The notes below the pieces were generated by a model that did not search any database, was not told the DNA's origin, and saw only the letters and a program-made list of their open reading frames with translations. The position numbers and the translations under genes were made by a program. A stretch of 64,000 nucleotides of DNA from Ophelia neglecta (lineage: Eukaryota): contig OZ260664.1 in assembly GCA_965285935.1 (NCBI GenBank), positions 93,558,001-93,622,000 of the forward strand, read 5' to 3'. This document shows positions 5,191 to 56,000 of this stretch, piece by piece. The first letter of the stretch is position 1. Each line of letters starts with the position of its first letter.

Positions 5191-8100
5191 TTACATATCT
5201 CCGTTTGTATTCAACGCTTCGTACATCGGATCACCTATGGCAGTGGCATTTACTGAAAAGTACAGTCACAGTTTGGTTGAATTAGAAGATTTATCCCAAA
5301 TGCAACATTTATCTACACGTACGCAGGATGATATACAGTCATATTTGAATAACAATAATGATAATAATAATAGTTTATTGCCACTTCAACACATGTATAT
5401 TGAGGTTTATCATGCGGATATAATAGATTTGCAAACAAAATAACAAATGGTTTAGCAAAATAATTAATGACGTGTGAGACAAATGGAGTAATGAAGCATA
5501 ATGTTTATGGGCCAATGGCGTCTATTCTTACCATATGTGACTGGCTGGGGTAACGGTGTCTCGTACACGTGACTGTCTGTGACAGCTACTTCATGGGCTG
5601 AGGGAGGCTCATGGTCTGATTGATCATCTTGTCCTGGTTCTGTCCTGGGAAGCCTTTTGGCCCTACGTCTGTAATAAAGAGACCGAATACAACGCAAACA
5701 AAGGTGAATCATTACTCAAGAAGAGTTCATTAAGTCGGACCGAAATCATAAGGAACCTAAGTATATTCCGTGGGTGGACATATCATATTGCTTATGTCTT
5801 CCAATGTACAAGTACACGTGTCCATCTCGAATGTTGAAAAACACATTTGCTCGTTGACCCATACTTTACGATTTTTTTAAACAGGATTCCAACGCTTTGC
5901 GCGATAAGCCTATTCACATTTTACAAACCTGATAAGGACGACAATAGCTATTGTAACAAGAGCCACTATGATTAGGAAGCCAACGACTGATCCGGCAACA
6001 GGCGCCGCAAGTCCAAACTGGCCAGATGGGCCCTTTGCTGGGTCTGGAGAAGAAACCGGAAATATATGCATGATGATTAGTTGGTGAATAATCTGGCAAA
6101 TATATTTAGGAAGAAGCATTTGGTGACTGCTGAACACTGATGTTGAGGCGTAAACGATCTATAGCACTTTCAGTTGAATCAAAGTAAAAGTATCCATTAA
6201 GTTTATTTCATAAATCATGATTGATTACCTAGTCCCAGATCAGCCAAAGTAGTAGCTGAGACATTGTTTGCGTTCTGGGAGTATTCTGTCTTTCCACTGG
6301 GCAAGTGACGATACACGTTGATTAAAATCTGATACGTTATGTTGGCCAAAAGCCCAGGTAACCTTTGGCTGTATTTCATAAAAACAGTATCTTCACTTAT
6401 AGATCTTTCATATGATGTATTTTCTAATCTTGTATCCTCAAAAATGGTAATTCTGTAACCATATACTGCTGCACTGTTTAATGGCATGCCTTCAACATGT
6501 GACCACTCGACGGTAATACTAGCACTGGTCACATTGGTTACATAAACATGGTTGCTTTTGGGAAAGTCCACGTAACCTGTAAAAACATCCATAGCAGTAG
6601 ATTAGTGTCAATCATGTATATACACAGTTAATAGTGACTAATTGGCAATAAAATGTTAACAGAAAATCTAGTGACAAGAGAAAACCTACTGATAGATACG
6701 TTACAGTGTCTTCCTGTGTACCACGTGTCATACGGAATCAGTTGACAGCCACGACTACACACTCCACTGTCTCTCTCACAGGTCTGTGTGTTAGGTAATG
6801 TCTCACAGTGACCACTGCAGCTGTACTCACAAGTCTCACCGTAGTAGCCATACGGACACAGGGTACACTGTCCACTGTATCTTTCACACGCTGGGGTACC
6901 TTCATTAACAAAACAATTCGTACTACATGCTTTATTACAGTCGTCAGCAAAAAAACTGTTAACACAACCATGAATACAACTTCCATTTAATTGATTACAA
7001 GACCCAAATCCGTTTTCTGAAAGAGCTTTACAGTGGGTACTGCATCTTTGGTTGCAAAAATCGCGGTACCACCCATCCTGACAACCAGTATAGCACATTC
7101 CATTTGTTTTTGAACACACAGGCTTTCCATTAACTCTAGCACAGTGTGTACTGCAAGGACGTTCACACTTCTTGTCATAAAAACCATTGTTACAATCGTT
7201 GTTACAATCTCCTGTTTCTCTGTGACATGTGTTAGAGCCTGTGACAACAAGACACCCAGTGTTACAGGAGTCTTGACACTGTTCTCCGTAGAAAGGTTCC
7301 AAACATCCATTTACACATCGTCCGTTAGTGATAGAACATGACCTGGACCCCTGAACGCTAACGCAATTAGCACTACATTGCCCGCCACAATTGTCCCCGT
7401 ACTGTTTGTCACCACATTCTGCAAGATAAATTATTTACAAGTTTACGCCATTTACAAGCTTCGTCAACTACTACTGGTATACTGAAATATTAAATATGTG
7501 TTTTTATTTACTAAAGAGATAACGCTGATGACCGAGCGATACCACAGGAAGTTCTAGTGCACCTATGCTAAGTGCAATGGAATCCCATAGATGTTATGGC
7601 ACCTGTTGAAACATTGGGAATTACATTTATTAAAGCAACAAGACTAGCCTTCAAGGATGGCTTGTGTACACTATACTATCTTTTTTTCATCATCGCGTAT
7701 TCCTTAATATAAAGATAATTTTGCTATAAAATGTTTTACCACATTAGGTTAAAATCATTTTGTTACCATTATATTGAATGTTGATATTGGTGCGGTTGAC
7801 TCGTTAGCTTTGTGCTCTGAATCGCGTCATGGACAACTGTTAACTACTTCTCATTTTAACTGATATTAATGTTATTATTTGTTTTCTATTTTATTGTTTA
7901 CATTACAAACGTTTGGGGTTAGGACGAGGATAGCTACATTGTTGTATGTGGCCCTGTGCCTATTTTATAATGGATTATATTTGATTAGTTCTTCGTCTAC
8001 CGGGAGACCACTCCCGTTTTATTTTAGTCTGAACACTCTGTATATCGTTGAACTTATCTCTCGGCGTGACGTGAATGCATACGATTTCAATAATGAAACA

Positions 8101-11100
8101 CATTTAACTCTAAACAAAGGACTGAAATTAATTTTTCGATTAGACGTTAAAAAAAGATGGGTTACCTGTTTTACAATCTGGGTACTTAAATCCGTCAGTG
8201 CATTTTGAGCAGCCAGTTAAAGGGTTACATGACTCGCATTGGTCACAATCTAAAAAGAAAGAGCACCACCTAATAACGGGTGTAACTTGACAAGGCATAT
8301 TATAGCGACGAGTAATACTCGGAAGCCGATCATAAGATGCACTGTTTTTTATTTGGTCTTATCTATCTTTCTCAGGTGGTGAACTTGAACTGTAAATTTA
8401 CACTTCATCTGTCTCCAGTATATTAGGAACATAGATAAGACATAAATAAGGCAATTTAAATTAACATTAACAAGTATACAAAACCAAAACATTTAGATAA
8501 GTTTTTAGTGGCGTATTTTAAACGCAACTTTAACTAGCACACACCTCGATGCAAACACAATGTGGGAGACGGCTTCCAGGAGCTCCGAAGGTTGTTCTTA
8601 TTGGTATATATTTTTCTCCCAAGACAACGCAACCTTTTAACTTGTATTAATTCGATTTTCAAATAGTATACTTCTAGGCATGTAGCATTTTATACGTTTT
8701 GTGTTTTTTCAGTCTGATTTAAAGCCCATGGAGCCTGTTTACTAAACACGTGCTTCCAAGCTTGAATGAACCTGGATTGAAATAAGCTTCAACTTATACT
8801 TATACCTGTTTCATATAACCAAGGTCATCAAGGGATTGCGCGGTTATTGCTAAGCAATAAAAAATGGCTAGATTTGATTTTAAATGCTTTCTAATATTGC
8901 TTGGAAAAGCCATCTTAAAGTTACAAGAACTTACGTATAGCAGTAACGCTATGAGGTTTTGTCATATATGCATATTATTGTTAACAAATTGTTGAAAATC
9001 TCTAAAGCATAAATGTAGCTGGTGTGCAGATAAAGACTAGGATTGCCCTTTATGAAATCAAAATTCACACCCATAGTGCTCATTAATCGGAGAATCCGTC
9101 GGCAACCAGTGCTATATTTATGAAATGGCGCCCTGCACCCGGTCCCATAAAGCCATTTAGCTGGGTTTACCAGCGAAAGCCCGGACTAATTTGCTCGATA
9201 AGTGACGCTCTCGATTTCGTAACGGGAATCGGTGTCTAAGTATTTTGTTAACAAATTGACCAGACCAGAATTGATCTACTACTTCATTACTTCGATCTAC
9301 GAAACTATAGTACAATACAATATTAAAAGGATGTAGTGAATTCTTTATATGTGTGTTTAATAATAATCGGCCAAAAGTAGAAGTTCTGTGAGGAGTTTTG
9401 CGAAGCGCCAGTGGTACAATGGGCTGCCAGTATTACACTAAGGAGAGGCGCACGAGCTCTTCCCTTCGCCGGCAACTAGATAGCTTGTAGCTGGCATGGT
9501 AGTCTGCGCGACAGGTGATGGGGAAGAATATTTTTTACCCCTCCCTCGGAACGAAAGTAGATAGTCGGTGGTTGGCGTGGAAGTCAGCGCGGCAGCCGAT
9601 GGGGAAGGAGCACCGTCAGGCTCATCACGGCCAACTAAGTGAGGAAGCTATAATAAGCTATCATATTAGAAACTAAAAATGATACATCTTCTATATATTT
9701 GTTGCTTGGCTATAACAAAGGAAGGGTGGTTATATGTATATGCAGAAATTGAAGTTACAATGAAACAGGATTTACGGTTAAGCTGCATCTCACTTCATTC
9801 CTGGTCTGACCAAATCTAGCATGTGGCAAAACCAGGGGTATAAGCCGCCTGGTAGGGGCAATTTTTAATGACGTACAGAGAAACATACCGAATTTATCAA
9901 AATATAATATATTGCTTAAAAAAATAAGAGGTTCTCTGATAGTTCCCCCAGCGTAGAGAAGATCCAATTCATAAACGATGACTTATTTTAAAACAAATTC
10001 AGGTTCTAGTTTCATTGTTCATTGTTTCAACCATTCGTATTAATACAGTGCTTGAAATTGAAACTTTAGAGTGCTAGTTTTTACTGCTGTCATTCATATG
10101 TTGTACCTGATGCATAGATTTGAACACATTATCACACAAACTTTTATCAATACTCAAAGACATTTGATCGTATAGTCAAGTAGACGATACGAGTCCAACC
10201 AATTGTTTAATTTGCTTCAATAGAAAAGTATATACTTTGAATACGATAATTCGCTAGTGATCTCCTGCACTAAGCCCTTATTTTTTCTTGAGCATAAAAT
10301 GAGCCCTGTAGTTCTGGAGATGAGTGGATTACCATCCTTTATTTATGGCTGATATTATAAACCTGTTAAGTAATATTATTGGCAAAACAAAACAGAATGC
10401 TACAAGTTAGCGTGTGTAAATTTCGACAAATACGCCGGAATGACATTTTGCTGGTTAAATTTGGTTCAATCGTCAATGAAAATTGATTGCTTTTAAGTGA
10501 ATTAACGTTGTGATGCGTGCTATTTTCTGTTTGAAGAAACAATGCTTTACTTAATGTAATGGCGTGGTCCTCCTTTTGAAAATAAGCGTAGTATGGTCAG
10601 TTGTTAAATTTACCTATAGGTTTGTATCCATGAACCATCACCTCACACAGTCCAAGGAACTCAGGTTGTATTCCACCTGTCCTGATGATAGTTACATATC
10701 TACCAGTAACTGGTGTGTCACACATTATGGTGTCATGTCCTCCGTTGGGTACGACTCCTGTATAATCCTTACAAAGTCTTGTTTGGTCACCATCAGTAGT
10801 ATAACCCACGCCAAGACGGAAATTGCCAGTTCGTTCTATGAAAAGGACGTGTTGGTATAAGTGTAGATACCCAAAATTTGGATGGCAATTGTTTATAATT
10901 ATATCGAAATTGATAATGCCTGCGCTGAAAAGAAAGTTATTCCGTAAGCTTTGAAAAATCTATTAGTCCAGTCAATGAAAAAAAATCCATTGAGGTTGGA
11001 CAAAAATGTTAACAAAGGTTTTTCACCTGAAATAGGTTCAGTGGGGGTATGTTAGTCCACACAAAAAAAACCAACGCGAATCCACCCATGGCAAATCCTA

Positions 11101-14100
11101 ATTTTCAGCCCGAATCCAAGATGGCCGACTTTTTAATAGTAAAATGTACGAACACACTAAACTTTTTAACTTACTGTCATAGAAACACATTTAAAAGGTC
11201 ATTTCCCACTAAAATTAGGATACCGAATCACATGGTTATACTTCTGAGTCCATCAGAGGTCAGGTTAATGTAATATTGTCAAGGTCAAGGTCAAATATGA
11301 TCAAAATAAGCCAAAATCAGGAAAAATTGGCATTTATTTTAATTGATTACAATCAAGAGTACCCTACAGTCAACGCCCGCGGATAAGGGAGGGCCTCACC
11401 CTTCAACGTCCAGTTTCAGCCCTAACGTGAGCTACGTCTAGTATATGTCCTTTCATGGGATCGGCTTGTAGTTCGCTGACTTTAATTCGCTGCCTACTAT
11501 TTATCTTTATTATGTTTATAGGTTATTCACAGTTTAGATTTTGCCATCTTAATTTCCGTCTTAATATCAATACTTTTGTTTATGTTATCCGTATATTTCG
11601 CTGTCCTGCTTTTGAGAAATTTACTTACATGTCAAGCCATTTTGTCACCCTTCGTTTCACTCATGCTTCATTCTTCATTTCCACATCGCTTACATCAGCA
11701 ACTCGTGTTTGTATTATGCTTTCGTCCTACTCACACACAAGTTATCAAACTTGTGCTGTCAAGTCACCATTTGCGTCTTACGAATTTGTCTAACTATGTA
11801 CTCTCAGAAGCCCTTTTTTTTTTAAATCTGTCATGATTTGCATTGCCCAGTATAGAGCGACGATCGGTTTATTTTGCCTCAGCAAGTCTAAATTTGGGAG
11901 TGACGCCTTGTTCTGGTTCATAATATTTCCGTCCTTTCTTTTTAGCTTATTTGTGGCCCCAAACATTTTGCGTCAGTGCGGTGATGTCGTGACAAACCCC
12001 GGCCCTGCAGATAAGATTGGTATTTCCTTCTCTTACATGAATATACGTAGTATTTTAGCAGCCGCAGTTGTCAACGGCGCTCCGTGTCACGACAAATTTA
12101 CACACCTGTGCGCTTACGCCTGTCACTATAGGCACGACATTATTGCACTTGGCGAAACATGGCTAAATTCTAGTATTCTTGACTCCTCTGTTTCAATCCC
12201 TGGTTATCTACCGCCCTTCCGACGGGATCGCGAGGGTGTTGGAGGCCGTCTCGCTGTTTATCTATCTGAATCTTTTAAAGGCAAACGGATGAAAGCAGTA
12301 GAGTCTAATTTAATCACTAATGTTTGTATAAGTACCAAAATTCAAAATTCCCTGGTTTTGCTGTGCTTTTACTTTAGACCACCTTCTGAAGATTGTCTTC
12401 TTTTTCCTACTGGTATAGACGAAATCATAGACTCGGCCTCCGAAAGTCACGAAATTTTGGTCGTCAGATAGAACTAATGCTGACGGCCGTCTAATACATG
12501 CCAACGAGGTTTCTCACAAGTTATACACGAAGTAACCCGTAGTGACACTCACTCCGAGGCCTGCCTCGACCATGTATTTATCAACTCTACCGGTCCTTTG
12601 ATATCCAGCGGTAATCTACCACGTATGTTAGATAACTGTGACCATCTCCCAATTTTTGTTGAAATGTTCCATGCCGTCCGCAAACCTCGAGCATTTAAAC
12701 GGGAAATATGGGATTTCAAAAACGGCAATCACGAAATCTATCAGGATCTTTTGTTCTCGGCCCCGTGGGATTTGGTACTTTCTCTCTCTGACATCGACGA
12801 TATTACTGAAAACTTTACTATTACTTTGCTACAAATCGCAGAGCATTGCTTTCCTCACCGCGAGGTTGTTATAAGACCCTCGGATAAGCCCTGGATGAAC
12901 TCTGTTATTAGACGTGCCATGGCAAGGCGCGATCGCCTTCATAAATCCAGAAATATTAGTATTAATCATACTACCCGATACAACACTGCCCGTAACCATG
13001 TCACTGACCTTGTGCGCGAGGCTAAAGCTAATCTTGACGCCTCGACAGATGAAATAGCCAATTATAATAACATTTTATCTCCAAACTGGAGGCGACTTAT
13101 GAAGGCTATAATTAAGACTTCTTCCTCCCCCGTTCTTCCCCTGCTTTGCACCAGGGTGACAATATTATTTCTGACCCTAATCTAAAGGCCGATATTTTCA
13201 ACGATTTTTTTATAGAGCAGTCTACAATTGACGGAAGTAGTGATGAAGTTCCTAGTGAACCAATTCTAGTCTCTCCTGACAGCATCGATTCAAAAATAAT
13301 ATCAGCTCTTGAGGTATATAATGTTCTCAAAAACTTAAATACTTCTAAAGCGACTGGTGCTGATAAATTTGGCAACTATCTCCTTCGCGAGGCCGCTCTC
13401 CCTCTTTCTGAACCACTTTCATGTTTGTTTAATATATCTTTAGTCCAGTGTAAATTTCCCTCGTGCTGGAAGCAAGCAGATGTTATTCCCTTACATAAAA
13501 AAGGTGATATCCATGACTGTAATAATTACCGCCCAATTTCACTTTTGCCTTGCCTGTCTAAAGTCTTTGAACGTTTGATGTTCAATCACCTATACTCTCA
13601 CTTAAAAACCCAAAATATCCTTGTGCCTAATCAAGCGGGATTCATTCCTAATGATTCAACTATTAATCAACTTCTCGACATATGTGAGAATTTACACAGA
13701 ACATTGGATTTGGGCGATTCAATTATTGGAATCTTCATTGACTTTACAAAGGCATTCGATAAAGTATGGCACAAAGGCCTAATTTACAAGTTGAAGAGAT
13801 ACGGTATAACTAGCAGTACCCTTTCCTGGATATCTGACTATTTATGTGACTGTCGACAGCGCGTTGTTTTACCTGGCGGATCCTCGTCCTACAAATTGGT
13901 TCCTGCGGGGGTTCCCCAGGGGTATCCGTCCTGGGGCCCCTACTTTTTCTAGTATACATAAACGACATCGTCCTGGAGATATCAAATTGAGCTTACCTTT
14001 TTGCGGATGACACGTCGCTCTTTGCCAAAGTAAAACTTGACAATATTGCGCCTTCGCTTGTTCGTGTCAATGAGGATCTTGCTTATATTAATACCTGGTG

Positions 14101-17100
14101 CAACACTTGGAAGGTTTCCACCAGCACCAAAAAGACTACATACATCCTGTTTTCTCGTCACCGCCGCTCTGTTGACTATGAACTAAATCTTTTTCTTGGT
14201 TCTGACAAAATCACCAAGTCTTTTTCCCATTCCCACTTAGGTGTTTTATTAACCAGTAACTTGTCCTGGGATGAACACATCCTGCATATTGCCAAAAAAG
14301 CTTCTTCTAGGCTTAATATTATTAAATCTGTTAAATATGAAATGTCTCGCAAAGGCCGCGACATGGCTTACAAGTCATATGTTAGGCCCCTACTTGAATA
14401 CGGGTCAATACTTTTTGATAATGCTTCTGCTGAACTGCTCGATATCTTAGAAAACATAAATCTTAAAGCAGCCCGTATTGTCTGTGGTGCCCGTAAGGGC
14501 ACTTCTCATGATGCTCTTCTGCAGGAAGTGGGATGGGAATCTTTTCTTGCACGTCGTAAAGCGTCTCGCATTCTCAAGTTATTTGACATTTTTAACAACA
14601 ATACTCCTGCTCAGCTCCGGAACCACATCCCCCCACTTATTAGCCACTCCTATCCTACTAGGAGAACTTTTGAGGAATATGTGCCACTACCTTTCTTTCG
14701 CACTCAAAATTACAAACCTTTTTTCTTTCATAAAACCATCTGCGATTGGAACACGCTTTCATTGTCTACTCGTAATTTATGTCGGAAGTCCACGTTTAAA
14801 TCGTTGATACGGGAAAAATGTAAGAAGCCCCCGAAGTATTACTTTATGGGGTCACGCAAAACTCAGATTTTCCTATCCCAGTGCCGACTGTCATGCTCAT
14901 GCCTTAATTATCCCTGTGCGACGATTATGGGCTTCATCCTTGGTGCTGTCACCATGATACCCATCCATGTTAAACTTTGTTTGCCATGGATTTGCCATGG
15001 GTGGATTCGGGTGGTTTTTTTGTGTGGACTAACATACCCCCACTGAACCTTTTTCATGTGAGAAACCTTTGTTAACATTTTTGTCCAACCTAAACCATTT
15101 ACTGCTCGGACTATATCCCTGTTCTTCAGTAAGGGTGGTTTTTTAATTCAAGTAAGACCTAGGAACAATCTTAGTAGTGTTTTTGGTCCCGTGTACTGTA
15201 AGTATACATGCGTATTGCAGTAAGATAACCAATAGAACATGATATCTTAACAATGATGACGGTGTACACCAAAAAAGCAGTACCTTAAACACATTCAGTT
15301 TGCCAATAACAAAGCTGTATGTATATATATATAGCTGAGGTTTAGCCTATGCTGTTAAAAACTCATTGCAAATTAACTTTAGTTAGCAANNNNNNNNNNN
15401 NNNNNNNNNNNNNNNNNNNNNNNNNNNNNNNNNNNNNNNNNNNNNNNNNNNNNNNNNNNNNNNNNNNNNNNNNNNNNNNNNNNNNNNNNNNNNNNNNNNN
15501 NNNNNNNNNNNNNNNNNNNNNNNNNNNNNNNNNNNNNNNNNNNNNNNNNAGTATTTGTAATACTCAAGGCTGGGTTCATGGTAGACATTGTAAAGCCATT
15601 TATTATAATTCAAGAATGTTAGAACTATGTGATCAATAAATGTCACTAGTCATCTCCTTCATGTTATAATATACTAATACGTGTGCGAATTAAATGTAAA
15701 CAAATTATTAACTAACAGTCTACAATTTCAAATACAACAGCTCGATACGTCTGCTTTGGGGCAGGATGACGATCAATAAGTTTTATAGTGTATTATTCTG
15801 TTTTAATTTAACTGTCTGTAGACGACAACATTTTGATTGTTAAATGATATATATCGATTTATTTGTTTGGTTGTCCTATTTTTCAAACAGTTCAACAGAA
15901 GCAGGCAAATGCCAAACCTATGCCTTGACTGGTCGAATATAATCAGAAGTTTGAATAAAGTCCATAGGGTCAGCACAATAAGCTATACTGCAATTGACTT
16001 ACTGTGAGCATTGCCATTTCTATTGAAGATGGTGACACTGACAACTGTGTAGGCATCTTGTAGAGCGACGTACCACCAGGCTCTGTTCCCGTCCCCAGCG
16101 TCAGGATGGGCACAATACCGTTCTGCCGAGCCGATGATGCCGTCCACGGCTAGACCCGCGTGTAAACCATTATAAGTTCCTGTCTGAGAGGCCGGCTTTC
16201 CACGAGCTACATTACCTGTTAGAACAACAAGTTACGAATATGATATGATGTGCTTAATGGTGTAAGGTGTAAAGCCACTCGATCTCAAACTGACATGATT
16301 TAATCGAAAGCTGGTCAAGTTGACCTTATTTAATTCATTAGAGAGTTTTGGTAGGCGTTAGTAGATAAATAGTAGTGATTGGGTAGGGCTGAATTATCAG
16401 GGCTGGCTTGAAACGCCAACGACCATGTGTTACCTATTCTACAGCCAGTCCCAGTTCTCCGTATGCCGGCCGCCGGGGGATCATCCATCTGACACACTCC
16501 TTGGTACAAACATGCTCCTGTCTTCCTGTCACAGGCAGATGTACACAGACAAGGAAACACACACCCAGCATTGGTATCGCCAAACCTGCACAGATCTGGG
16601 GACAGATATGTAAACTAAATGAATTCATTTTGTTACGCATATTGATGGTGTCCTTTCAAAATATAACAGAAATAGCTATGTATTTTGTTTTATGATACCA
16701 AAAAAGGCCAAAACAACAACGACGTACTGCTCAAGGTAAATCTATAGCTCGGGGCGGAGATTAAGAATGTACCATACGTCAAAAAGCTTCGTAACTGATC
16801 ACCGACAGTCGGAGATCTGCCTTGCAAAAGTAGGCCCCTTGGTCAACCGTCATATTCGGAGTGTTAAAAAAAACTAGGTGTTGTCTGCATATTTGCGGGT
16901 GTTATCTCTAAAGGCACGATGATTTTGCCAGTGTGGCTATACCACGAGTCAGAACCAGACAAGGAAATGTTAGTGTATGCTAGCCCATCAGTAGCAGACA
17001 TATAGAGGTTACAAAGTAACCTGAAATTACATTTCCAAGGCTGCACAGCCTGGCCCGTCGTAGGTTTCAATAGGACGTTTGTCCCCTGGCTTTATTAAAG

Positions 17101-42900: not shown

Positions 42901-43229
42901 TGGCGTGGCAGTCCTCGCGGCAGCCGAAAGGAAGCGTCACCGTCAGGCTCATATTGTCTATCGATTCCAACTTAGTGAGCTATAGTTATCATTTTAGAAA
43001 CTTAAAATGACACATCTGCTATATATTGTTTCTTGGCTGTAACAACGGAAGCGTGTTTATATGCATATGCGGAAATACTCGTTTTAATGAAACAGGAATT
43101 AAGGCTAAGCTGCATCTCACTTCATTGCTGGTCTGACCAAATCTAGCATGTGGCAAACTAGGGGTATAAGCCGCCTGGTAGGGGCAATTTTTAAAGGCGT
43201 ATAGAGAAACATACTCTCCGAGATCATCA

Positions 43230-44090
43230 GAGTATACTGTACGCGTTAAGAAAGTATGCGGTTATCTGATAGGTCCACCAGCTTAGAGAAGATCCAATAA
43301 ATAATCGATGACTTATTTTAAGACAAATTCATGTTCTAGTTTCATTGTTCATTGTTTTTACCGATTCGTATTAATACAGTGCTTGGATTTGAACCTTTAG
43401 AGTGTTAGTTTTTACTGCTGTCATTCATATGCTGTACCTGATAAATAGATTTGAACACACTGGAACTTTCATCAATACTCAAAGGCCCTTGATCGTATAG
43501 TCAAGTAGACGATTTGAGTCCAACCAATTTTTTAATTTGCTTCAATAGAAAAATAAAGACTTTTAATACGATAATTCGCTAGGGTTCTCCTGCACTAAAC
43601 CCTTATTTATTCTTGAATATTAGGATTAAAAAATGAGCCCTTTTGTTCTGTAGATGCGTGGATTACCATCCTTTATTGCTGGCTGATATTATAAACCGGA
43701 TAAAAATCCGACTTTATTAGAGTATACCCTTCGCGTTGAGAAAGTATGATGTTCTCTAATGGTCAATGACTTATTTTTAAACAAATTCGTATACATGTTC
43801 TACTTTCATGGTTCATTGTTTTAACCCGCTCGTGGTAATACAGTGCTTAGATTTGAATCTTTTGAGTGCTAGTTTTTAGCAATACTGCTCTCCGTCATAC
43901 GCTGTAACTGATGTATACTTTGGAACACATTAGAACATCCACCAATAGCCAAAGATTCTCGCTCGTATAGTCAGGTAGAGGACCTTTTTGAACACCAGGG
44001 ATTATAAAATTAGCCCTAATGTTCTGTAGATGCGAGGAATACCACCCTTTCATTACTGGCCGATATAAAAACCGGATAAGTACTATTATT
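43230..44090. repeat. Diverged local tandem duplication (about 0.4 kb) in intron 4 of paralog C
   Basis: The block agagtatac..gacttattt..tagtca(a/g)gtag..aaaccggataa occurs twice (about 43230-43702 and 43719-44080) but once in the other paralogs. Confidence 0.65.
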
Positions 44091-44306
44091 GGCAAAACAA
44101 AACAGAATGTTACAGGTTAGCATGACAAATACGGCAGAATGGCATATTGCAAATTTGGTTTCAATCTTCAGTGAAAGTTGATTGTTTTTAATGAATTAAC
44201 GTTGTGATGCGTGCTATTTCTATTTGATGAAACAATGCTTTACTAAATGTAATGACCCGGTCCTCTTTATGGAAATAAATGTAGTATGGTCAGTTGTTGA
44301 ATTTAC

Positions 44307-45395
44307 CTATAGGTTTGTATCCATGAACCATCACCTCACACAGCCCAAGGAACCGAGGTTCTAGTCCACTTGTCCTGATGATAGTTACATATCTACCAGT
44401 AGCTGGTGTGTCACACATTATGGTGTCATGTCCTCCAACGGGTACGACTCCTGTATAATCCTTACAAAGTCTTGTTTGGTCACCATGAGTAGTGTCACCC
44501 ACGCCAAGACGAAAATTGCCGGTTCGTTCTATGGAAATGACGTGTTGGTATTTAGTGCAGATACTCAAATTTCGGAGGTCAATTGTTTTTAATTATATCG
44601 AAATTGATAATGCCTGCGATGGAAAAAGTAAGTTAATCCGTAAGCATCGAAAAACCTATCCCTGTTCTTCAATGCTGCTTTAAAAGTGGGTAAATATTAG
44701 TTAAACCGGAGGCATGTGTTTTTGTCCGCAGTTTATGATTGTTATGATTGGTATATTAAACTTTTTTATTCAAGTAAGACCTTCGTACTGAAGTAAGATA
44801 ACTAGTAGAACATGATAGCATAACAATGATGACGTTGTTATAATATACTAATGTGGGTGCGAATATAATGTAAACAAATTATTAATAAACGGTCCACAAG
44901 ATTTATACACAACAGTTCGATACCGCTGCTTTGAGGCAGGATGACGATCAATAAGTTTTGTTTTGTAACATTCTGTTGTAATTTAACTGTCTCTAGACGG
45001 CAACATTTGGATTGTTAAATGATATATATTGACTTATTTGTTTGGTTGTCCTAATCAATTTTCAATTCTCAACCGAAGCAGGCAAATGCTAAACCTATGC
45101 CTTGACTGGTCGAATATGATCAGAATTTCGAATAAAGTCCACAGGGTCAGCACAATAAGCTATAGTGTGATTGACTTACTGTGATAATGGGTAGCTTTTC
45201 GATTGAAGATGGTGACACTAACAACTGTGTAGGCATCTAGTAGATCGACGTACCACCAGGCTCTGTTCCCGACCTCAGCGTCAGGATGGGCACAAGACCA
45301 TACTGCTGAGCCGATAATGCCGTCCACGGCAAGACCCGCGTGTAAACCAGCATACGTTCCATTCTGAGAGGCCGGCTTTCCACGAGCCACATTAC
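44307..45395 (-). CDS. Paralog C F-type lectin exons 3 and 4 (45395-45180, 44528-44307), both open
   Basis: Same motifs and splice phases as paralogs A and B. Confidence 0.8.
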
Positions 45396-46399
45396 CTGTT
45401 AGAATAACAAGTGACGAATATGATATGATGTGCTTAATAATGTATGGTATAAAGCCACTTGATCTCAAACTGACATAATCTAATCGAAATCGAGTCAAGT
45501 TGAACTTGTCTAATTCATTAGATAGTTGAGCTCCGATTTTGGTAGGCGTTAGTAGGTAAATAGTAGTGATTGGGTAGGGCTGAATTGTCAGGACAGGCTT
45601 GAAACGCCATCGACCATGTGTTACCTATTCTACAGCCAGTCCCAGTTCTCCGTATGCCGGCCGCCGGGGGATCATCAAACTGACACACTCCTTGGTACAA
45701 ACATGCTCCTGTCTTCCTGTCACAGGCAGATGTACACAGACACGGAAACACACACCCATCATTGGTATCGCCAAATCTGCACAGATCTAGAGACAGAAAT
45801 GTAAGCTAAATGAATTAATTTGGTTACGCATACAGATTGTGTCCTTTCATAATATAACAGTAATAGCTATGTATTTTGTTTTATGATACCGAGGAACGAA
45901 AAATCCGCTTTCTTTCAGCATTCAATGATGAACAGACCTTAATCAGTAACATTCTTCAGCTCTGCCCCCCTAAACCTTTTGACTCTGAGAACTATTGTAA
46001 CATGAAGTTCAGATCAACATTTACCAAGGCTGAGTTTTGGTTATGCGCAGATTGCTAGAATGTGCGCTTCCCAACCACTTCCCATGACACATGGGTGAAG
46101 CATAAGAAAGTAAAACCGGAATATAATGGAAAGCGGAAAAAAAGTAGGGAACCACCACTGACATCAGATAACCAGACAAAAAGTGGCGACGCCTCGCTAG
46201 AGTTACATCTTCTAGAAAGTCAGATACCCTATAAGGAGAGTGCAACTACGGCACTACGGACATAACATACTTAACCAGATATTAAATTTGACAAAGGTAT
46301 CAAGGCGACTATAAAACAGGACTGAAGCGCGCCATTGCCAAATGCCAAAACAACAACGACGAAATGATCAAGGTAAATTTAAGGCTCGTGGCGGAGATA

Positions 46400-47460
46400 A
46401 AGAAAGTGCTCGCATGTGCCGTAAGTCAAAAAGCTCTGCAACTGATCACCGACAGTCGAAGATCTGACTTGCAAAAGCAGGCCCCTTGGTCAACCGTCAT
46501 GTTCGAAGTGTAATGGAACACATAAAACTAGCTATTGTCTACATATTTGAGGGTGTTATCTCAAAAAGCACGATGATTTTGCCAGTATGGCTATAACACG
46601 AGTCAGAACCAGACAAGGAAATGTTAGTGTATGCCAGCCCATCAGTAGCAGACGTATAGAGGTTACAATAGTAACCTGTAATTGCATCTCCAAGGTAAAA
46701 CAGCCTTGCCTGTCGTTGTTTTCAATAGAACGTTTGTCCTCTGGCTTTATTTAAGGTGTATGAACTGCCGTTAATGCATCGTCTCTATACCCTTCATACG
46801 GACTTACCAGTATCTTTAAGTCACTTCCTGTTCCTGAGGACATGTTCTGTACTGCCCCTGTCTTGAAAACAAACAATTATGGCCCGTGGCTTATTTGAGC
46901 GCTTTCCAACCATATGTGAATCTTTCACCATGTGCGCAGGATCGATCTTCCATTTGACACGTATTATGTCATCAACTTTTGTGCTACATGCCTCATCTTT
47001 CTTCTCCTGTTTTCCACGCACGTTATTTATCCCAGATATTTTCTTAATACCTGTCTTTTCTACTCTACAATTTTTTTGGAGATTAAGTCCTTCATATTGG
47101 ACATTACAACCTACTCTTTCCTGGATTCCATGTTCTTTCCATTAGTTCAACCTTATTTCATTCCAAATTATTAAACAACCTCTCCTCGATTATATCAATC
47201 TGTTCTTCCATCTGTCTCTTGATTGCGATCAAAATTTGCGATTTCATGTTATCGTGTTCTTTTTAAGAGCTGCCTCTATCGGTGTCAGCTGAACGTCCAT
47301 GTCTGACTTATCAAATGATATTCCTTCCCGGTAATATTCCTTCAAGTGGTATTCCTTCACTGAAGGCGTTTTACCACTATACTGGGACAGTGTTTTCATG
47401 ACATAGGCAGCACGTTTGCCTTAAGAATGCCAAGCCAGCGTACAATCGAATCCAGAACAA
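46400..47460 (-). mobile_element. Ancient LINE ORF1 relic (L2/CR1-type RRM) in intron 1 of paralog C
   Basis: KVDDII..DSHMVGKRSNKPRAIIVCF..VLRNRK*LK and downstream YSHTGKIIV resemble non-LTR ORF1p motifs (HRVG..PRPIIV.F; W...GKI.V). Confidence 0.55.
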
Positions 47461-50145
47461 CAATGCTTTCGACACAGTTTTTGGTTTTGCTGTTTACACA
47501 AACCCTGTAAACCATTTTTGAATAGCCGTGCAACTTGATATTATCATAAAGGAATGTAAATAACTCATATATTAATACAATATACTGCATGTCTCAGGAA
47601 TTTACATGGGCTGTTACTATTTTCACACTATAAAACAATGTAGGTCCTATATTATCCAGAAGTTTCTCCGAGGAAAATGCTTAATAACTATTCCGTGAAC
47701 GCGAAAATAATAGAGCGACACTCTTCCTAGCGTCCTAGATTTCATACGTAGTAATTGTCAGTGAGGCTAGACGTTTTTCAGGTTAGCTGTAACATGGAGC
47801 CCCCCCCCCCATCCCCCACCCCGCCATACATAAATGCCATCATCGCTACACCCATAAAGTGTTGGTTCTATATTCCACGTGTGCAGACACTCGGTAATTC
47901 ATGTAACTTTATAGAAATTTCCTATAATAATATTTAATATTTGCTTTTATGTTGAGCCCGTCCATTTACCATCATGACGCATTGTAACTGTTCTTTGTGT
48001 AACTGTGTGTTCAACATGTACCTGTATTGTGTCAACACTTTCTATCTACATCTTTCTATAAGTTTGCTTGTCGACTGCATGCATGTGGGTACACTGTGTA
48101 GCCTACAAACCAGTTGTGGTTTATGGCGAATAAAGATGACATGCCTACATTCATTCATGTATTTATGACAATTTTACACATGGTTAGCCTAGTATATACG
48201 GAGAAAAACGGTCGCAATCATTTATAACTTGGGGAGCCTTACACGCTTTTTTTCACTATTGTTTTAAAAGTGGGGCAGACTGGATGGTAGCGTCTAGGTT
48301 GTTCGACTTTTTGCATTGCTTTCTTCAATCTCCCATTTAATGTCAGTCAATTTTATGTAAATGTTTTGTTTGTCATATGTATATAGTTTTGTCAGCTGTC
48401 AAGTGTCTCGAATCAATCATCAAGCACGAAAGCCTTTCACGATAGTGTAGAAAATCGGCCAAGCGATACACATCGAATTGTACCGATATATACAGCTACA
48501 CACGTAATGGCTGCAGGGTTACCATACCCGCCCTTTTTTACACTTGCAGGATATATTACGCGCAACCTTAGGTATATTGAAGCGCCCTAAGCTCATACCT
48601 ATATACATAGTTCCAGGTACAAGAACCATTACAAGTACAAAATTTTGGAAGCAGATTTGCCAGTTCTTATAAAAAGCTTTAAAACTAAAAATAAAGCATA
48701 GAAATATATAATAATGTCGAGCTCCTGAAACACACTACATCCGACAGGTGGCACTGGGGGAAAGTCTAGTGAGGCTGCTCTGTTACTCGCGTCGTTTAGA
48801 TCTATTCCAGGTAAGAGAAAATCTGGCATTTTAGTACGATGAATTCTTCCCCTTGCCTCCCTCTTGAAACAAAAATTATTTTGCTACTTTTATCAGGGTG
48901 CCCTACACCAGAAAAGTATTTCTTTTTTACAATAAAAATTTCTTTACGACGCAAATGCGTATTTTGCAACGTTAACCACAAACCAAAATGATTTTTATTC
49001 TAGCCAAACTCATATTGTCTGGATACAATTTAAGCGATCTAAGTATTTAGAAAAATAGGGATCGCCCGGTAAAAATTTAGGTTCTTATAAAAGTCTATGG
49101 GCCTATTTTTGGTGAAATGATTCTGAATTTTACAATTCCGAAGTGCCCTCAGACTGACAATACAGTTTTCGCCATAACTAGATAATATATCTTGACATTT
49201 TGAAGGGCTGTAATATAGATTTCAGACATCAGGAGCAAATGTAGGTTGTCCAGTTCTCATTGGGAGAGACCCTTATTTTCATAAAATCAATTTGGAACTT
49301 TTGCTTTGACCTACAATCAATTTAGTTTAGAATTCACACATAAGATAGAATATTGCTCCTATTTCATAAAACTGAGCAATGTCTTGGCATCTAAACCTTT
49401 AAACAAGCCTCCAATCGTACCATTATCTAAGTGGTACTCCATTTAAACTACTGAGATTCAACCGATTTTATTATACCGTGCAGCTAAAACAGGTTTATAT
49501 TCTATTTCATCAGTTCTAAGTTCTAGTTCTAATTGGGTGAATTCATTGAATAAATTCAAAATGGCCGCTATTTTGCGAATCAGGCGGCTTTCTGTTTTAA
49601 CCTATAATCAACTTGACCTTAATTTCACCCTTAAGATATAATCTGATGCAAACAATTGACCTAATCATAAAAGCAATGCATCGAGACCGATTTGAGCCTT
49701 CATCCACGCTTATAGGTCTCATTTGGGTTGAATGATACATAATACACCATCACGTAGCACAGTCGATATTATAATACCGTAAGCAGATTTTCGTCGCATT
49801 TCAGTCGCTTGATTAGATATCAAAACTCTTCAAATGCTATAACAAGTTTCAAGCATTGCGAAACCCGACAAAATGAGTCATTCTCACTAAACAAGACCAT
49901 ATTTGCATCAATTCAACATGGCTATCATTTTATTGTTGAAAATTTACTTAAAGTTGTGTTCAACCAAACACAAAATAAACTTAAGCAGGCGCCTTAATAA
50001 AGAAAGAAACATCTTACTGAACATCATTAAAAGTAGCAAGCCTTTTTTGTTTGCATAACTGACGAATTGCCGTCAATAGTCTCTTTAATTACCATGTTAT
50101 GATTTATTGATTAATATACAGGTTACCATCCAGAGGTCATTACAA

Positions 50146-50235
50146 CGGCGTGTATCCCAGGCTTAGTACCAGAGTGTGTACACCGGGCTTATCACCACGG
50201 CGTGTACACCAGGTTTATTACCACAGATTACTGAG
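50146..50235. repeat. 26-bp minisatellite (about 3 units), intron 1 of C
   Basis: Same consensus. Confidence 0.8.
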
Positions 50236-51016
50236 CTGACTTTTGTCCGTTTCATATTATCCAGTTTATTACGGCGTATCCCGTGAAATAAGGATAATTG
50301 AGGCATAACGTATCTCACATTTTAAAAAATCATTTTCACACCAATGGTTTTACAAATATGACCGCACCCTAAAGGGCTAGGATATGCATGAGCAAGCAGC
50401 CCCCCCCTTACACACAGACAAGCACAAATGGGTTGTGTGCAGTACATTTTCTGGATAACTACCGGGTGCATTGAATCAAAAAGTAAAGATAAAAGGCATA
50501 TACATATCTCCCTATTACATGTATTTTAAAATTACAAAGCCTATTCTGAACAGCCGAACTTAGAACAAGTAAATTACATAAATTCAAATAATACATGACG
50601 TAAGAACCATATCCATATGTACGTGTTTGTATTAACCGGCGAGGAATAAGCTACACAGACATGCAGTGACATACATCTAGTTAGACAACACGTTGTAACA
50701 ATATTTGTAATAGCTTGACAGCAACATTCACTAACCTGTCTGGCCAGTAACTCTTAGGATCAAAACGCCTGTAGTTATTAGCAAACTAACATAGACTTCA
50801 CAAATCATGTTCAGACCATAGGCACAGCTTGTAGATCAAGGTGCTGTTACGAAGTGAACTGAATCTATAGCATCAATGTCACGATATTTACACATACTTT
50901 CCGGTTTCTTATTAGTAAGCACTCGTCTCTAAACAAATAAACGCGCCTCTCCATGCGTTAAGGCGGTCTCTAACGTTCCGATGGGTAAAATAGTACGACG
51001 TTATCAAATGTTGATG

Positions 51017-53032: not shown

Positions 53033-56000
53033 TATCGTCTACAAACAAACAATTGGCTAAACAACCTCATTTACGCTTTCGTAACTAGGCAAGTTGAATA
53101 CAATTATAGCCTATTATATATCATGATTGATATTACAGTGACTGCAGATGGTCATCAGATCTAGCAGATTCTCTACCCCCAATTTCGAGACATTAGTCAG
53201 TGTAACAAAAAAAAACTAGGATAAGGGAATTTAAATCTCGCTGTACTGATTTGAGCCAAACTTGCGTATGATGTTTTTTGCGCTGCTGCTGACGGTTCCT
53301 TCGGGCTGGTTTATTGTATCATTCCTGATTAATGTCTTTGAATTGTTTGCTGGACATTTGAAAAATGTATAGCTCATTATTTGATGCTTTGCTTGCTTAT
53401 TAAAATTGTAGTTGTAATTGTATTTTGTGATTATCCGTGCCTTCCGAGGACTCATTACACCTGTCGGTTATCTAGAGGAAAAGCATTTTTAATAAAGAGT
53501 GCTCTCTGAAGAAGCAGCTTGATTATAAACAAGACTATATTGTATGTTATAAGTAATACCTACATTCAATATTGAAGGAAAATTAAGTATGTCAGTTCAA
53601 GTACGTAGGTTTATTACCATCCGACAAAGAAATAAGTACAAACCAACAAATAACAATGGTATTAAGGAAATTACAAAGAAACATATTATATATAATCATA
53701 CTAGTGAAATTGACTGCAATTTGGCCGCATAAAACACAATTGTATATATTATGTTGAACGATGAAAAGGCCACATTTTTCATACTAAGTCAGCTAACTAT
53801 GTGGACACTCACGTCGGTGGGTACCAGAAATAACACTTGTGCGATTGTCAAATATACATGTGTGAAATAAAATACCTTTAAAATAACTTTTTAAGAACAA
53901 ACAATGGTAAACACAGGAATTATTAATAATAAGCTCAACATACTTGTTTGCTTAAGTATACGAGGTTGCTTTTATAATGCACTGCTGCATTTTAAGACTT
54001 AAAATTTGAAAACAACTTTATATGCGTTTGATATGTGAACATTTCCAGGCCCTAAGAATTCTCGGAAAGAAGAAATGACAATGTTATTGAACTGATTTAA
54101 ATTGTCAAGTATGTCTGCAGATAGTTAAAAGTACAGTCCAATATAGAAAAGGGTAACCAGTTTTATGTCTTGTTCCAGGCAAGGCCTGTTCACAAGTAAA
54201 AACTAATTTCACCTGGTATATATACCTGCTGAATCATTTCTCTCCTAAGTCATCTTAACTCCTCAGGGAAAATACACAGAACAGTCGCCGCAGCGCGAGA
54301 AATCTAATTCATTTGGCAACCAGGTAACCATTCGCCTCTTAGGTAGAGAGTGGTTCATTTGGTTTAAAGTCTTTGTCAGAGGTGATCGCCGGTCATTCAG
54401 TCTGGGAGCTGTGCTCGATACCAATTCGGCCACAGCGCCACAAATAATATAAAGGACCTTACGTTATCAAAATATTCTGAATTGCAAATTGTGGTGCGAT
54501 TTAAAATCAATTAAATGGCTTAGATATTTATGACCCCAGTAGAGCAATACTAACAAGCTGATGTTTATTCATGTTGCACAGGAAAAGGAAATAAAACATT
54601 TTTTTCATGTTGGAAAATGGTTACTTTAACGAAATTCCACAGGTGGCATTCATCACGTCCATTTACGTACTGCCAACTCTACTTGTTACATATCTCCGTT
54701 TGTATTCAACGCTTCGTACATCGGATCACCTATGGCAGTGGCATTTACTGAAAAGTACAATCACAGTTTGGTTGAATTAGAAGTTTTATCCCAAATGCAA
54801 CATTTATTTACATGTACGCAGGATGATATACAGTCATATTTGAATAACAATAATAATAATAATAATAGTTTATTGCCACTTCAACACATGTATATTGAGG
54901 TTAATCGTATGGAAACAAAATAAAAGATTTGCTAACAAAAGAACAAATGGTTTAGCAAAATAATTAATGACGTGTGAGACAAATGGAGTAATGAAGCATA
55001 ATGTTTATGGGCCAATGGCGTCTATTTTTACCATAGGTGACTGGCTGGGGTAACGGTGTCTCGTACACGTGACTGTCTGTGACAGCTACTTCATGGGCTG
55101 AGGGAGGCTCATGGTCCGATTGATCATCTTGTCCTGGTTCTGTCCTGGGAAGCCTTTTGGCCCTACGTCTGTAATAAAGAGACTGAATACAACGCAAACG
55201 AAGGTGAATCATTAATCAAGATGAGTCGGACTGAAATGATCAGGAACCTAAGTATATTCCGTGGGTGGACATATCATATTGCTAAGGTCTTGCAATGGCC
55301 AATTACAGCAGTCAATCTCGAATGTTGAAACACACATTTGCCCGTCGACTTATACTTTACGATTTTCTTAACAGGATTCCAACGCTTTGGTGTAAAGCGC
55401 GATTAACATATTCACTTTTACACACCTGATAAGAACGACAATAACAATTGTAACAAGAGCCGCTATGATTAGGAAGCCAACGACTGATCCGGCAACAGGA
55501 GCCGCAAGTCGAAACTGGCCAGATGGGCCCTTCGCCGGGTCTGGAGAGGCTACTGAAAACGTTTATATGATGATTAGTTGGTGAATAAACTGGCATACAT
55601 TTATAGCAGTTACAGTTGAATCAAAGTAAAAGTATCCATTGAGTTTATTTTATTGATCATGATTGATTACCTCGTCCCAGATCGGCCAATGTATTAGCTG
55701 AGACATTGTTTGCGTCCTGGGATTCTTCTGTCTTTCCACCGGGCAAGTGACGATACACGTTGACTCAAATCTGATACGTTGTGTTGGACAAAAGCCCAGG
55801 TAGCCTTTGGCTGTATTTCATAAAAACAGTATCTTCACTTATAGATCTTTCATATGATGTATTTTTTAATCTTGTATCCTCAAAAATGGTAATTCTGTAA
55901 CCATATACTGCTGTACTGTTTAATGGCATGTCTTCAACATGTGACCACTCGACGGTAATACTAGCACTGGTCACATTAGTTACATAAACATGGTTACTCT

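What the first reader, a model, noticed from the sequence alone, without database searches (positions are those of the whole stretch)
5191..54747. Two cytoplasmic tail types: ITAM-like versus a stop exactly at the second tyrosine
Seen: B ends DPMYEELNKNEDFYEEF* and C ends ..YEEFGVGTN* (DxxYxxL-x6-YxxF). A and D end DPMYEALNTNGDM*, where TAA aligns codon-for-codon with the TAT of the second Tyr, and sequence past the stop still aligns. All copies also carry VYETP and TYVN (YxN). Known: ITAM consensus is YxxL/I-x6-8-YxxL/I and binds tandem-SH2 kinases (Syk/Shark); single YxxL hemITAMs exist; YxN binds Grb2. Inference: paralogs pair different lectin heads with full versus half ITAM outputs. The Phe in the second half-site is non-canonical.
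Basis: partly seen in the sequence, partly recalled or inferred. Interest (0 to 1): 0.75.

Follow-up and report, generated by a model that had tools for sequence, protein, structure and literature searches.

The report
Two tail variants in lectin-receptor cluster
Neighbouring invertebrate surface-receptor genes really do end in either a double-tyrosine or a cut-short single-tyrosine signalling tail, but both are local departures from a motif kept by most of a very large gene family, and several of the copies are broken.

Summary
On the minus strand, copies A and D end ..GDPMYEALNTNGDM*, B ends ..YEELNKNEDFYEEF* and C ..YEEFGVGTN*. All carry VYETP and a splice-made TYVN.

The genes are ten-exon type I receptors: signal peptide, Cys-rich exon, F-type-lectin-like domain, EGF-like repeats, FN3, membrane span and a roughly 70-residue tail. 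A and B are open throughout. C, D and a fifth copy E, just outside the window, are broken.

I read 95 terminal exons of this family in the genome. Of these, 83 keep YEQL-x5-Y[DE][DEN][IV], where the spacer varies in sequence but is always five residues, one short of a canonical ITAM.

Against those relatives both local types are derived:
- A/D/E have Met at the second Tyr and a stop one codon later (TAT GAA to ATG TAA).
- B/C gained a Phe codon (spacer 6) and end in YEEF.

The lectin heads are one domain type, 80-86% identical.

A Shark-type kinase (SH2-ankyrin-SH2-kinase) exists in the genome, and the upstream neighbour has the same ectodomain on a tandem phosphatase.

No RNA data exist, so terminal-exon use and any signalling difference are untested. 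Earlier notes of this scan had already flagged this family on other DNA.

The parts
5191..20799 (-). Gene A, truncated tail, all ten exons open. Exon 1 (signal peptide) 20799-20727; Cys-rich 16595-16434; lectin 16215-16003 and 10835-10614; EGF-like 8249-8166 and 7418-6690; FN3 6576-6229; TM 6043-5929; cytoplasmic 5668-5532; terminal 5252-5191.
   Evidence: Exon mapping, GT-AG sites and open frames come.
24742..34666 (-). Gene B, double-tyrosine tail, all ten exons open. Exon 1 34666-34594; Cys-rich 31369-31208; lectin 30978-30763 and 29716-29495; EGF-like 27549-27460 and 26960-26235; FN3 26121-25774; TM 25588-25474; cytoplasmic 25213-25077; terminal 24815-24742.
   Evidence: Pfam gives fn3 over its cut-off and F5_F8_type_C_2 below its cut-off for each lectin half.
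38572..50808 (-). Gene C, tail ..YEEFGVGTN*, broken. The long EGF-like exon 40798-40098 is a net 25 bases short (frameshift), and the FN3 exon 40004-39660 has CT where the donor GT should be. Cytoplasmic exon 39005-38869; terminal exon 38660-38572; exon 1 50808-50736.
54686..64000 (-). Gene D, truncated tail, broken by TGA at 55767-55765 inside the FN3 exon, where A and B have TTA. Cytoplasmic exon 55168-55032; terminal exon 54747-54686. Its exon 1 lies beyond the window end, at window-equivalent 65709-65637.
5191..5252 (-). Terminal exon of A: (V)NATAIGDPMYEALNTNGDM, stop TAA at 5193-5191.
   Evidence: An AATAAA lies 119 bases after the stop.
24742..24815 (-). Terminal exon of B: (V)NAAATGDPMYEELNKNEDFYEEF, stop TGA at 24744-24742.
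   Evidence: An AATAAA lies 103 bases after the stop. The contig reads GGA at the stop codon.
25077..25213 (-). Cytoplasmic exon of B (phase 2 to 1): RRAKRLPRTEPGHDDQSDHKPPSAHEVAVTDSHVYETPLPQPVTY. Homologues are A 5668-5532, C 39005-38869 and D 55168-55032.
   Evidence: The copies differ at 0-5 of 137 bases, against 24-33 of about 250 in the upstream intron. The family alignment is A2.
15390..15549 (.). Assembly gap, inside the intron between the two lectin exons of gene A.
   Evidence: The flanks are collinear with B's intron. The gap was not filled.
733..805 (-). Exon 1 (signal peptide MICEVYVSLLITTGVLILRVTGQT) of the upstream neighbour Z. Z has the same ectodomain exons and two tyrosine-phosphatase domains. 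The rest of it lies outside the window, in loci L033 and L030.

Best explanation
The window holds four members (A-D) of a tandem sub-cluster. A fifth member, E, lies just beyond its end, and Z, with the same ectodomain on a tandem phosphatase, lies just before its start. All belong to a very large lineage-specific family of type I receptors: signal peptide, Cys-rich module, F-type-lectin-like domain, EGF-like repeats, FN3, one membrane span and a tail of about 70 residues without any enzyme domain.

The family tail is a four-tyrosine docking module. It has YE.P, a splice-made Y[VA]N, and a double motif YEQL-x5-Y[DE][DEN][IV]. The spacer of that double motif changes in sequence but almost never in length.

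Both tail types in the window are derived from that ancestral form. In the common ancestor of A, D and E, the codons TAT GAA became ATG TAA. This removed the second tyrosine and ended the protein. The allele then spread by duplication or gene conversion. In B and C a Phe codon was gained before the second Tyr and two codons were lost after YEE, giving spacer 6 and YEEF.

Shown: the sequences, the gene models by splice-site and frame conservation, the family census, the lesions in C, D and E, and the presence of a Shark-type kinase gene.

Inferred:
- After phosphorylation by a Src-type kinase, the single sites dock single-SH2 adaptors (YxN a Grb2/Drk type, YxxP a Crk/Nck type).
- The fixed-length double motif is read as one unit by a tandem-SH2 protein, most plausibly the Shark-like kinase.
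- The A/D/E tail keeps the single sites but can no longer be read as a double motif.
- B's altered spacing and Phe may weaken or change that reading.

The half tail is thus most likely a partial loss of signalling output in a sub-cluster under relaxed constraint, not a purpose-built hemITAM.
For: - Tail sequences and splice junctions.
- Census of 95 terminal exons: 83 have both Tyr with spacer 5; 2 have spacer 6 (B, C); 1 has spacer 4; 5 have the first Tyr only (A, D, E, L094, L095); 3 have the second only; 1 was unparsed (L014, no second Tyr).
- Among the 83 there are 22 different spacer sequences, all five residues long. The second site always has I or V at +3. The stop falls 1, 2 or 8 residues after it.
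- Gap-free codon line-up of A/D/E with L011-L013. E still reads Q-I-E-L-G-V-G-T-N after its stop, matching C's coding GVGTN.
- The cytoplasmic exon is much more conserved than the upstream intron: 1-3 of 137 against 28-30 of about 250, Fisher p = 2e-5 to 1.5e-3. Its dN/dS is 0-0.6, against 1.3-1.6 for the Cys-rich and first lectin exons in comparisons with B.
- Splice phases of the two tail exons are conserved in the 16 of 18 other loci examined where the pattern search found the cytoplasmic exon.
- AATAAA lies 93-119 bases after the stop in A-D.
- Lesions in C, D and E.
- No phosphatase exons lie behind A-E. Z is a tandem phosphatase.
- Shark-like ORF with SH2-Ank-SH2-kinase, whose best collinear solved relatives are ZAP-70 and SYK.
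- Draper precedent: the tandem SH2 of Shark binds a double-tyrosine motif, and other tail tyrosines also contribute (PMC6219719, passages read).
Against: - There is no RNA for this species in the run index, and the three runs that hold the stretch are DNA, with introns covered and no splice joints. Expression and use of the terminal exons are therefore unproven.
- A is open in all ten exons. The 62 coding bases of the truncated exon differ at only 0-1 positions among A, D and E, which could mean the short tail is maintained by selection. This is not significantly below the adjacent intron, however (12-16 of 279; p = 0.08-0.48).
- Spacer 5 lies outside the canonical ITAM range, and no binding data exist for it.
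- A profile of the cytoplasmic exon found no relative in 1.84 billion representative proteins. The 3 hits were all bacterial repeat proteins. Conservation beyond this genome is therefore unknown.
- The lesions in C, D and E rest on one assembly.
Confidence: 0.55

Rival explanations
1. Functional split. A (half tail) and B (full tail) are both working receptors, kept because they give different outputs. The single YEAL would act like a hemITAM that needs receptor dimers. The double motif would recruit a Syk/Shark kinase directly.
For: A and B are open in all ten exons with canonical splice sites. The truncated coding exon is unchanged in protein among A, D and E. The cytoplasmic exon is under constraint. 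A Shark-type kinase is present. B has Leu where A, C and D have His in the lectin exon, so ligand binding may differ.
Against: Only 3 of 95 family tails carry this truncation, and 2 of those 3 sit in broken genes. B's motif is itself atypical, with spacer 6 and Phe at +3. The residues before YEAL (GDPM) lack the acidic run of known hemITAMs (for the DEDG definition). The heads are 80-86% identical. There are no expression data.
Confidence: 0.2
2. The whole sub-cluster is dying. A and B are also silent or on the way to loss, and both tail types are neutral debris of a formerly standard x5 tail.
For: Three of five copies are broken. Both tail types depart from a motif kept in 83 of 95 copies. 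dN/dS is near or above 1 in the N-terminal exons. Gene A's lectin intron carries an insertion of about 4 kb.
Against: The cytoplasmic exon is far better conserved than its upstream intron, even in the broken copies. A and B have no lesion in any exon. A poly(A) signal is conserved behind A-D.
Confidence: 0.15
3. The stop in A/D/E is bypassed. The change that made TAA also made TAT|GTAACA, which could serve as a splice donor to a further exon, so the true C-terminus differs.
For: The GT at 5194 matches 5 of 9 positions of the donor consensus, the same score as the weakest accepted donor of gene B.
Against: No conserved downstream coding exon or phosphatase relic was found. AATAAA lies 117-119 bases after the stop in A and D. 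Across the family this exon always ends the reading frame.
Confidence: 0.05

Closest known systems
ITAM (YxxL/I-x6-8-YxxL/I) of vertebrate immunoreceptor chains. The consensus is as quoted in the finding; my own recall agrees.
   Same: Two acidic YxxΦ half-sites lie close together in the cytoplasmic tail of a kinase-less receptor. B and C have spacer 6. A Syk-family (Shark-type) kinase gene is present in the genome.
   Different: The family norm is spacer 5 (83 of 95). B and C end in YxxF. A, D and E have one half-site only. The motif sits on the ligand-binding chain itself, together with YxxP and YxN sites. No binding data exist.
Draper / CED-1 / MEGF10 engulfment receptors, with Shark and Src42A
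   Same: A type I receptor with many Cys-rich EGF-like repeats. Its tail combines a double-tyrosine motif read by the tandem SH2 of Shark with further functional tyrosines (PMC6219719, passages read).
   Different: The tyrosines of Draper's motif are 15 residues apart (Y934, Y949), against 9-10 here. I saw no NPxY in these tails. Here there is a lectin-like head and an FN3 domain. Pfam reported no family for the EGF-like exons at E up to 0.01. Homology is not shown.
hemITAM of Dectin-1 / CLEC-2 / CLEC9A
   Same: A lectin-type receptor with a single YxxL, as in the A/D/E tail.
   Different: Known hemITAMs follow a tri-acidic DEDG and sit in the N-terminal tail of type II C-type lectins (PMC11624271, passages read). 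Here the context is GDPM-YEAL at the C-terminus of a type I protein, and it arose by truncation of a double motif.
Paired activating/inhibitory receptor clusters of vertebrates (KIR, Ly49 and the like; recalled, not read here)
   Same: Tandem genes with near-identical ectodomains and opposite kinds of cytoplasmic part. Z has two phosphatase domains, while A-E have tyrosine docking tails.
   Different: The inhibitory arm is a built-in phosphatase rather than an ITIM. The ectodomain is lectin/EGF/FN3 rather than Ig or C-type lectin. Function is untested. Earlier notes of this scan already made this comparison on other DNA of the genome.

Membership tests
ITAM | Two half-sites YxxL/I | tested here: not met
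   B and C have YEEL plus YEEF, with Phe at +3. A, D and E have YEAL only. The family norm, YEQL plus Y[DE][DEN][IV], would meet this feature.
ITAM | Spacer of 6-8 residues between the half-sites | tested here: inconclusive
   B and C have 6, which meets it. 83 of 95 family tails have 5, which does not. A, D and E have no second site.
ITAM | Phosphorylated motif binds the tandem SH2 of a Syk-family kinase | not testable with these tools
   Only the presence of a Shark-like gene was shown.
ITAM | Located in the cytoplasmic part of a membrane protein | tested here: met
   The hydrophobic stretch AAPVAGSVVGFLIIAALVTIVIVVLI is followed by RRRAKR, then the tail. This was read directly; no predictor was run.
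hemITAM | Single YxxL preceded by a tri-acidic stretch (DEDG) in a type II C-type lectin tail | tested here: not met
   A, D and E read IGDPMYEAL, at the C-terminal end of a type I protein. The definition comes from PMC11624271.
F-type lectin domain | Fucose motif H-x24-R-x-D-x4-(R/K), as given in PMC5712786 | tested here: not met
   In A, C and D the His of YCAHP is followed by 28 residues before the Arg of FNR. The next segment reads R-x-x-D or R-N-G-N, not R-x-D. B has Leu for the His. This was read by eye and is split over two exons.
F-type lectin domain | Cation motif h2DGx and overall domain match | tested here: inconclusive
   LAVDG is present in all copies. Pfam F5_F8_type_C_2 scores 22.6-24.5 bits for the first half. 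For the second half it scores 18.6 bits in A's exon and reports nothing in B's corrected exon. All are below the 27.8-bit cut-off. The exons were not joined.
Draper/CED-1/MEGF10 | EMI domain, Nimrod-type EGF repeats, NPxY plus ITAM in the tail | tested here: not met
   Pfam reported no family at E up to 0.01 for the Cys-rich and EGF-like exons. I saw no NPxY in the tail. The head is lectin-like.
Receptor tyrosine phosphatase | Cytoplasmic Y_phosphatase domain(s) | tested here: not met
   A-E: tblastn with Z's phosphatase pieces found only Z itself in 114 kb. Z itself meets it, with five exon pieces over the Pfam cut-off in two domains.
Shark kinase (for locus L114, the proposed reader) | SH2 - ankyrin repeats - SH2 - tyrosine kinase in one protein | tested here: met
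   A 685-aa ORF carries two SH2 stretches, Ank repeats at 91-183 and a kinase at 408-663. ZAP-70 and SYK are the best collinear solved relatives.

The most novel reading that the evidence does not exclude
The strictly five-residue-spaced YEQL-x5-YEEI is a lineage-specific 'short ITAM', read as one unit by the Shark-type tandem-SH2 kinase. It sits on roughly a hundred lectin receptors that lie beside phosphatase-tailed twins. This sub-cluster then supplies natural x5-derived alleles (x6/Phe in B, half-site in A) that are kept because they tune or uncouple that reading. That would be an invertebrate activating/inhibitory/decoy receptor system built independently of the vertebrate one.
Probability: 0.2. 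Interest if true: 0.75.

Novelty: new variant of a known kind. Interest (0 to 1): 0.45.

Why it matters
If the fixed-length double-tyrosine motif is read by a Shark/Syk-type kinase, this family would be a large, independently evolved set of glycan-sensing receptors that signal the way vertebrate immunoreceptors do. It would also have built-in phosphatase counterparts next door.

The window's two tail variants would then be ready-made natural mutants, with changed spacing or a removed half-site, for testing how strict such motif reading is outside vertebrates.

If not, the finding is an ordinary case of truncation and drift in a partly decayed gene cluster. Either way, the family census shows that the 'ITAM' label used so far for these tails is loose, because the conserved spacing is 5, not 6-8.

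Tried and rejected
1. RNA evidence. The run index lists no RNA run. The three runs that hold the stretch, all from one sample, are DNA contigs covering the introns, with no joints at splice sites.

2. Cross-species relatives of the tail. A 43-position profile of the cytoplasmic exon against 1.84 billion representatives gave 3 hits at E up to 0.001. All were bacterial repeat proteins (FN3-like and NHL-like repeats) matched in several short stretches, so I rejected them. The profile is short, so a blank is weak evidence. I did not run the search for homologous proteins because its length window excludes full-length relatives of single exons.

3. First model of the second lectin exon (306 bases). 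It made C, D and Z look frameshifted. The indels sit in its first 84 bases, and a conserved in-phase acceptor (..TCATAG|AA) follows them. The 222-base exon is open in all five copies, so I dropped the 'lectin frameshift' lesions.

4. First candidate for exon 1 (MFLCNFLNTIVICWFVLISLSD, 37640-37574). I rejected it because copies differ by 1-base indels and A has TTG for ATG. It was replaced by MICEVYVS.LITTGVLIL.VTGQT, which has ATG, an open frame, phase 1 and GT in all five copies.

5. Phosphatase exon relics behind A-E, which would suggest alternative long isoforms. None were found.

6. Selection on the truncated exon. It has 0-1 differences in 62 bases among A, D and E, which is not significantly below the adjacent intron. 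The strong contrast with the post-stop 60 bases holds only for pairs with E, whose 3' flank is C-like, so it may mark a recombination boundary rather than selection.

7. Literature. Three searches returned no listed paper on a lectin/EGF/FN3 receptor family with such tails in annelids or molluscs. I read only the listings. Supplements were not opened.

All searches were done exon by exon, so no whole-protein domain score or structure prediction was made.

Full report
WHAT IS THERE

The window (38% G+C) is G000:C7:93558001-93622000. It is a tandem array of units about 14-20 kb long, 80-90% identical in DNA, all in one orientation.

- A (5252-5191) and D (54747-54686): ..GDPMYEALNTNGDM*
- B (24815-24742): ..GDPMYEELNKNEDFYEEF*
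- C (38660-38572): ..YEEFGVGTN*

In the four-copy alignment TAA lies under TAT, and the sequences go on aligning after the stop, with a 4-base indel.

GENE MODELS

I worked out B's exons from open frames, GT-AG sites and phase continuity, then carried them to the other copies by alignment.

All ectodomain exons are phase 1-1. The membrane-span exon ends in phase 2. The cytoplasmic exon runs from phase 2 to phase 1, and the terminal exon starts in phase 1.

The donor TAT G|GTAAGA joined to the acceptor TTTTCAG|TA AAT makes the codon GTA.

Two of my first guesses were wrong, and I corrected them:
- The second lectin exon is 222 bases long, not 306, and is open in all copies.
- The first coding exon is MICEVYVS.LITTGVLIL.VTGQT, with ATG, an open frame, a phase 1 end and a GT donor in Z, A, B, C and D.

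Pfam finds fn3 over its cut-off. For the two lectin half-domains it gives sub-threshold F5_F8_type_C_2 matches to complementary halves of the model. The cation motif LAVDG is present. The F-type fucose motif, as defined in PMC5712786, is not met exactly, and B has Leu where the others have His.

WHICH COPIES ARE WHOLE

A and B are open in all ten exons. The other three are broken:
- C has a net 25-base loss in the long EGF-like exon and CT in place of the FN3 donor.
- D has TGA at 55767-55765 in FN3, where A and B have TTA.
- E lies 5.8 kb beyond the window and has the A/D tail. Its long EGF-like exon is split by about 6.5 kb. No lectin, Cys-rich or first exon was found in the 30 kb fetched.

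The assembly gap 15390-15549 lies in A's intron between the lectin exons. Its flanks are collinear with B's intron. It affects no exon, and I did not fill it.

THE NEIGHBOUR

Just before the window start lies gene Z. It has the same ectodomain exons, a membrane span and two tyrosine-phosphatase domains. No phosphatase relics lie behind A-E, and AATAAA follows the stops of A-D at 93-119 bases. The short exon therefore does look terminal.

THE FAMILY

The cytoplasmic exon and the terminal exon recur across the genome:
- C7 at 87.2, 89.1-89.95, 90.5-91.07, 91.4-91.75, 93.56-93.63 and 103.95-104.06 Mb
- C16
- C2

The tool says its counts are lower bounds.

I read 95 terminal exons. These were all 87 places, plus L012, L014, L022 and A-E. 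They sort as follows:

| Class | Count | Copies |
|---|---|---|
| Both tyrosines, spacer 5 | 83 | |
| Both tyrosines, spacer 6 | 2 | B, C |
| Both tyrosines, spacer 4 | 1 | L100 |
| First tyrosine only | 5 | A, D, E, L094, L095 |
| Second tyrosine only | 3 | L083, L097, L101 |
| Unparsed | 1 | L014 (no second Tyr) |

Among the 83:
- The first site is YEQL in 73.
- There are 22 different spacer sequences, all five residues long.
- The second site is Y[DE][DEN][IV], never with Phe.
- The stop falls 1, 2 or 8 residues later.

Length is therefore conserved while sequence is free. That is what one expects if the two tyrosines are read together. Y-to-Y is 9 residues, one short of the canonical ITAM minimum.

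The splice phases of the two tail exons are the same in the 16 of 18 other loci where my pattern search found the cytoplasmic exon.

ORIGIN OF THE TWO LOCAL TYPES

A/D/E read GAT ATG TAA CAA [AG]TA GA. TTG. The nearest outside paralogues read GAT TAT GAA GAA [AG]T[AG] ... TTG GGA. No gap is needed to align them.

Met therefore stands at the Tyr position and the stop at the following Glu. The old I/V, L and G codons are still visible after the stop. E even keeps ..GVGTN in frame, as in C's coding end.

Both local types are derived.

CONSTRAINT

- The cytoplasmic exon differs at 0-5 of 137 bases between copies, against 24-33 of about 250 in the upstream intron.
- Its dN/dS is 0-0.6. The Cys-rich and first lectin exons run at 1.3-1.6 in comparisons with B, on small counts.
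- The truncated coding exon has 0-1 differences in 62 bases among A, D and E. This is not significantly fewer than the adjacent intron (p = 0.08-0.48).
- Different segments give different copy relationships, so recombination or gene conversion is common here.

A POSSIBLE READER

The genome has at least 86 SH2 matches. One 695-codon open frame on C8 holds two SH2 domains and a tyrosine kinase.

Its 685-aa ORF has the Shark architecture SH2-ankyrin-SH2-kinase. ZAP-70 and SYK are its best collinear solved relatives.

In Drosophila the tandem SH2 of Shark binds Draper's double-tyrosine motif (Y934/Y949), and other tail tyrosines add to signalling (PMC6219719, passages read).

WHAT COULD NOT BE SHOWN

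No RNA run exists in the index. The three holders, all from one sample, are DNA contigs.

There, the only contig over 24744 reads GGA instead of B's TGA. Its depth is about twice that of the single-copy intron contigs. It may be C's contig, or B may end like C in that sample.

A profile of the cytoplasmic exon found no true relative in 1.84 billion representative proteins.

VERDICT

There are two tail types and one lacks the second half-site. But the 'full' type is itself an outlier of a family whose conserved motif is not a canonical ITAM. The heads are not different lectins. Most copies of the sub-cluster are broken.

Earlier notes of this scan (s1-750692, s1-747419, s1-750689) had already described this family, with phosphatase or tyrosine tails, on other pieces of the genome. 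What this window adds is the natural x6 and half-site variants and, from my census, the strict x5 rule.

Noticed in passing
window 733-805 (exon 1); the rest is in L033 and L030 (window-equivalent -3500 to -16530): Upstream neighbour Z has the same Cys-rich, lectin, EGF-like, FN3 and TM exons as A-E but carries two tyrosine-phosphatase domains. The phosphatase-tailed and tyrosine-tailed forms therefore sit side by side in this cluster too.
   Followed up: partly
window 24742-24744: B's stop codon TGA is not seen in the DNA contigs of the three public runs (one sample). The only contig there reads GGA, as in copy C, at about twice single-copy depth.
   Followed up: partly
window 10963-15139: Gene A's intron between the lectin exons holds about 4 kb absent from B, C and D. 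Its ends carry inverted similarity (10902-11051 against 15033-15143 on opposite strands), like a transposon with terminal inverted repeats. The assembly gap lies just beside it.
   Followed up: no
window 33542-34127 and 5-216: These are arrays of short tandem repeats, related to each other at about 80-84%. They lie in the first introns of B and Z.
   Followed up: no
L029/L031 (window-equivalent 71846-78393): Copy E's long EGF-like exon is split by about 6.5 kb of inserted DNA. E also lacks detectable lectin, Cys-rich and first exons in the 30 kb fetched.
   Followed up: partly
G000:C2:96.40-96.66 Mb: A dense run of about 20 SH2-domain matches, many in pairs 2-2.5 kb apart on one strand. None of the 137 kinase matches listed falls there. 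It may be a tandemly expanded family of SH2 adaptor genes.
   Followed up: no
window 29500-29699: Summed contig depth over the second lectin exon is about 30 times that of the single-copy intron contigs in the same run, with a likeness floor of 90%. This fits many near-identical copies of the exon in the genome. The tool warns that depth is not a copy number.
   Followed up: no
L030 (window-equivalent -18467 to -19998): Long open frames behind gene Z look like a retroelement. I judged this by eye and made no family search.
   Followed up: no
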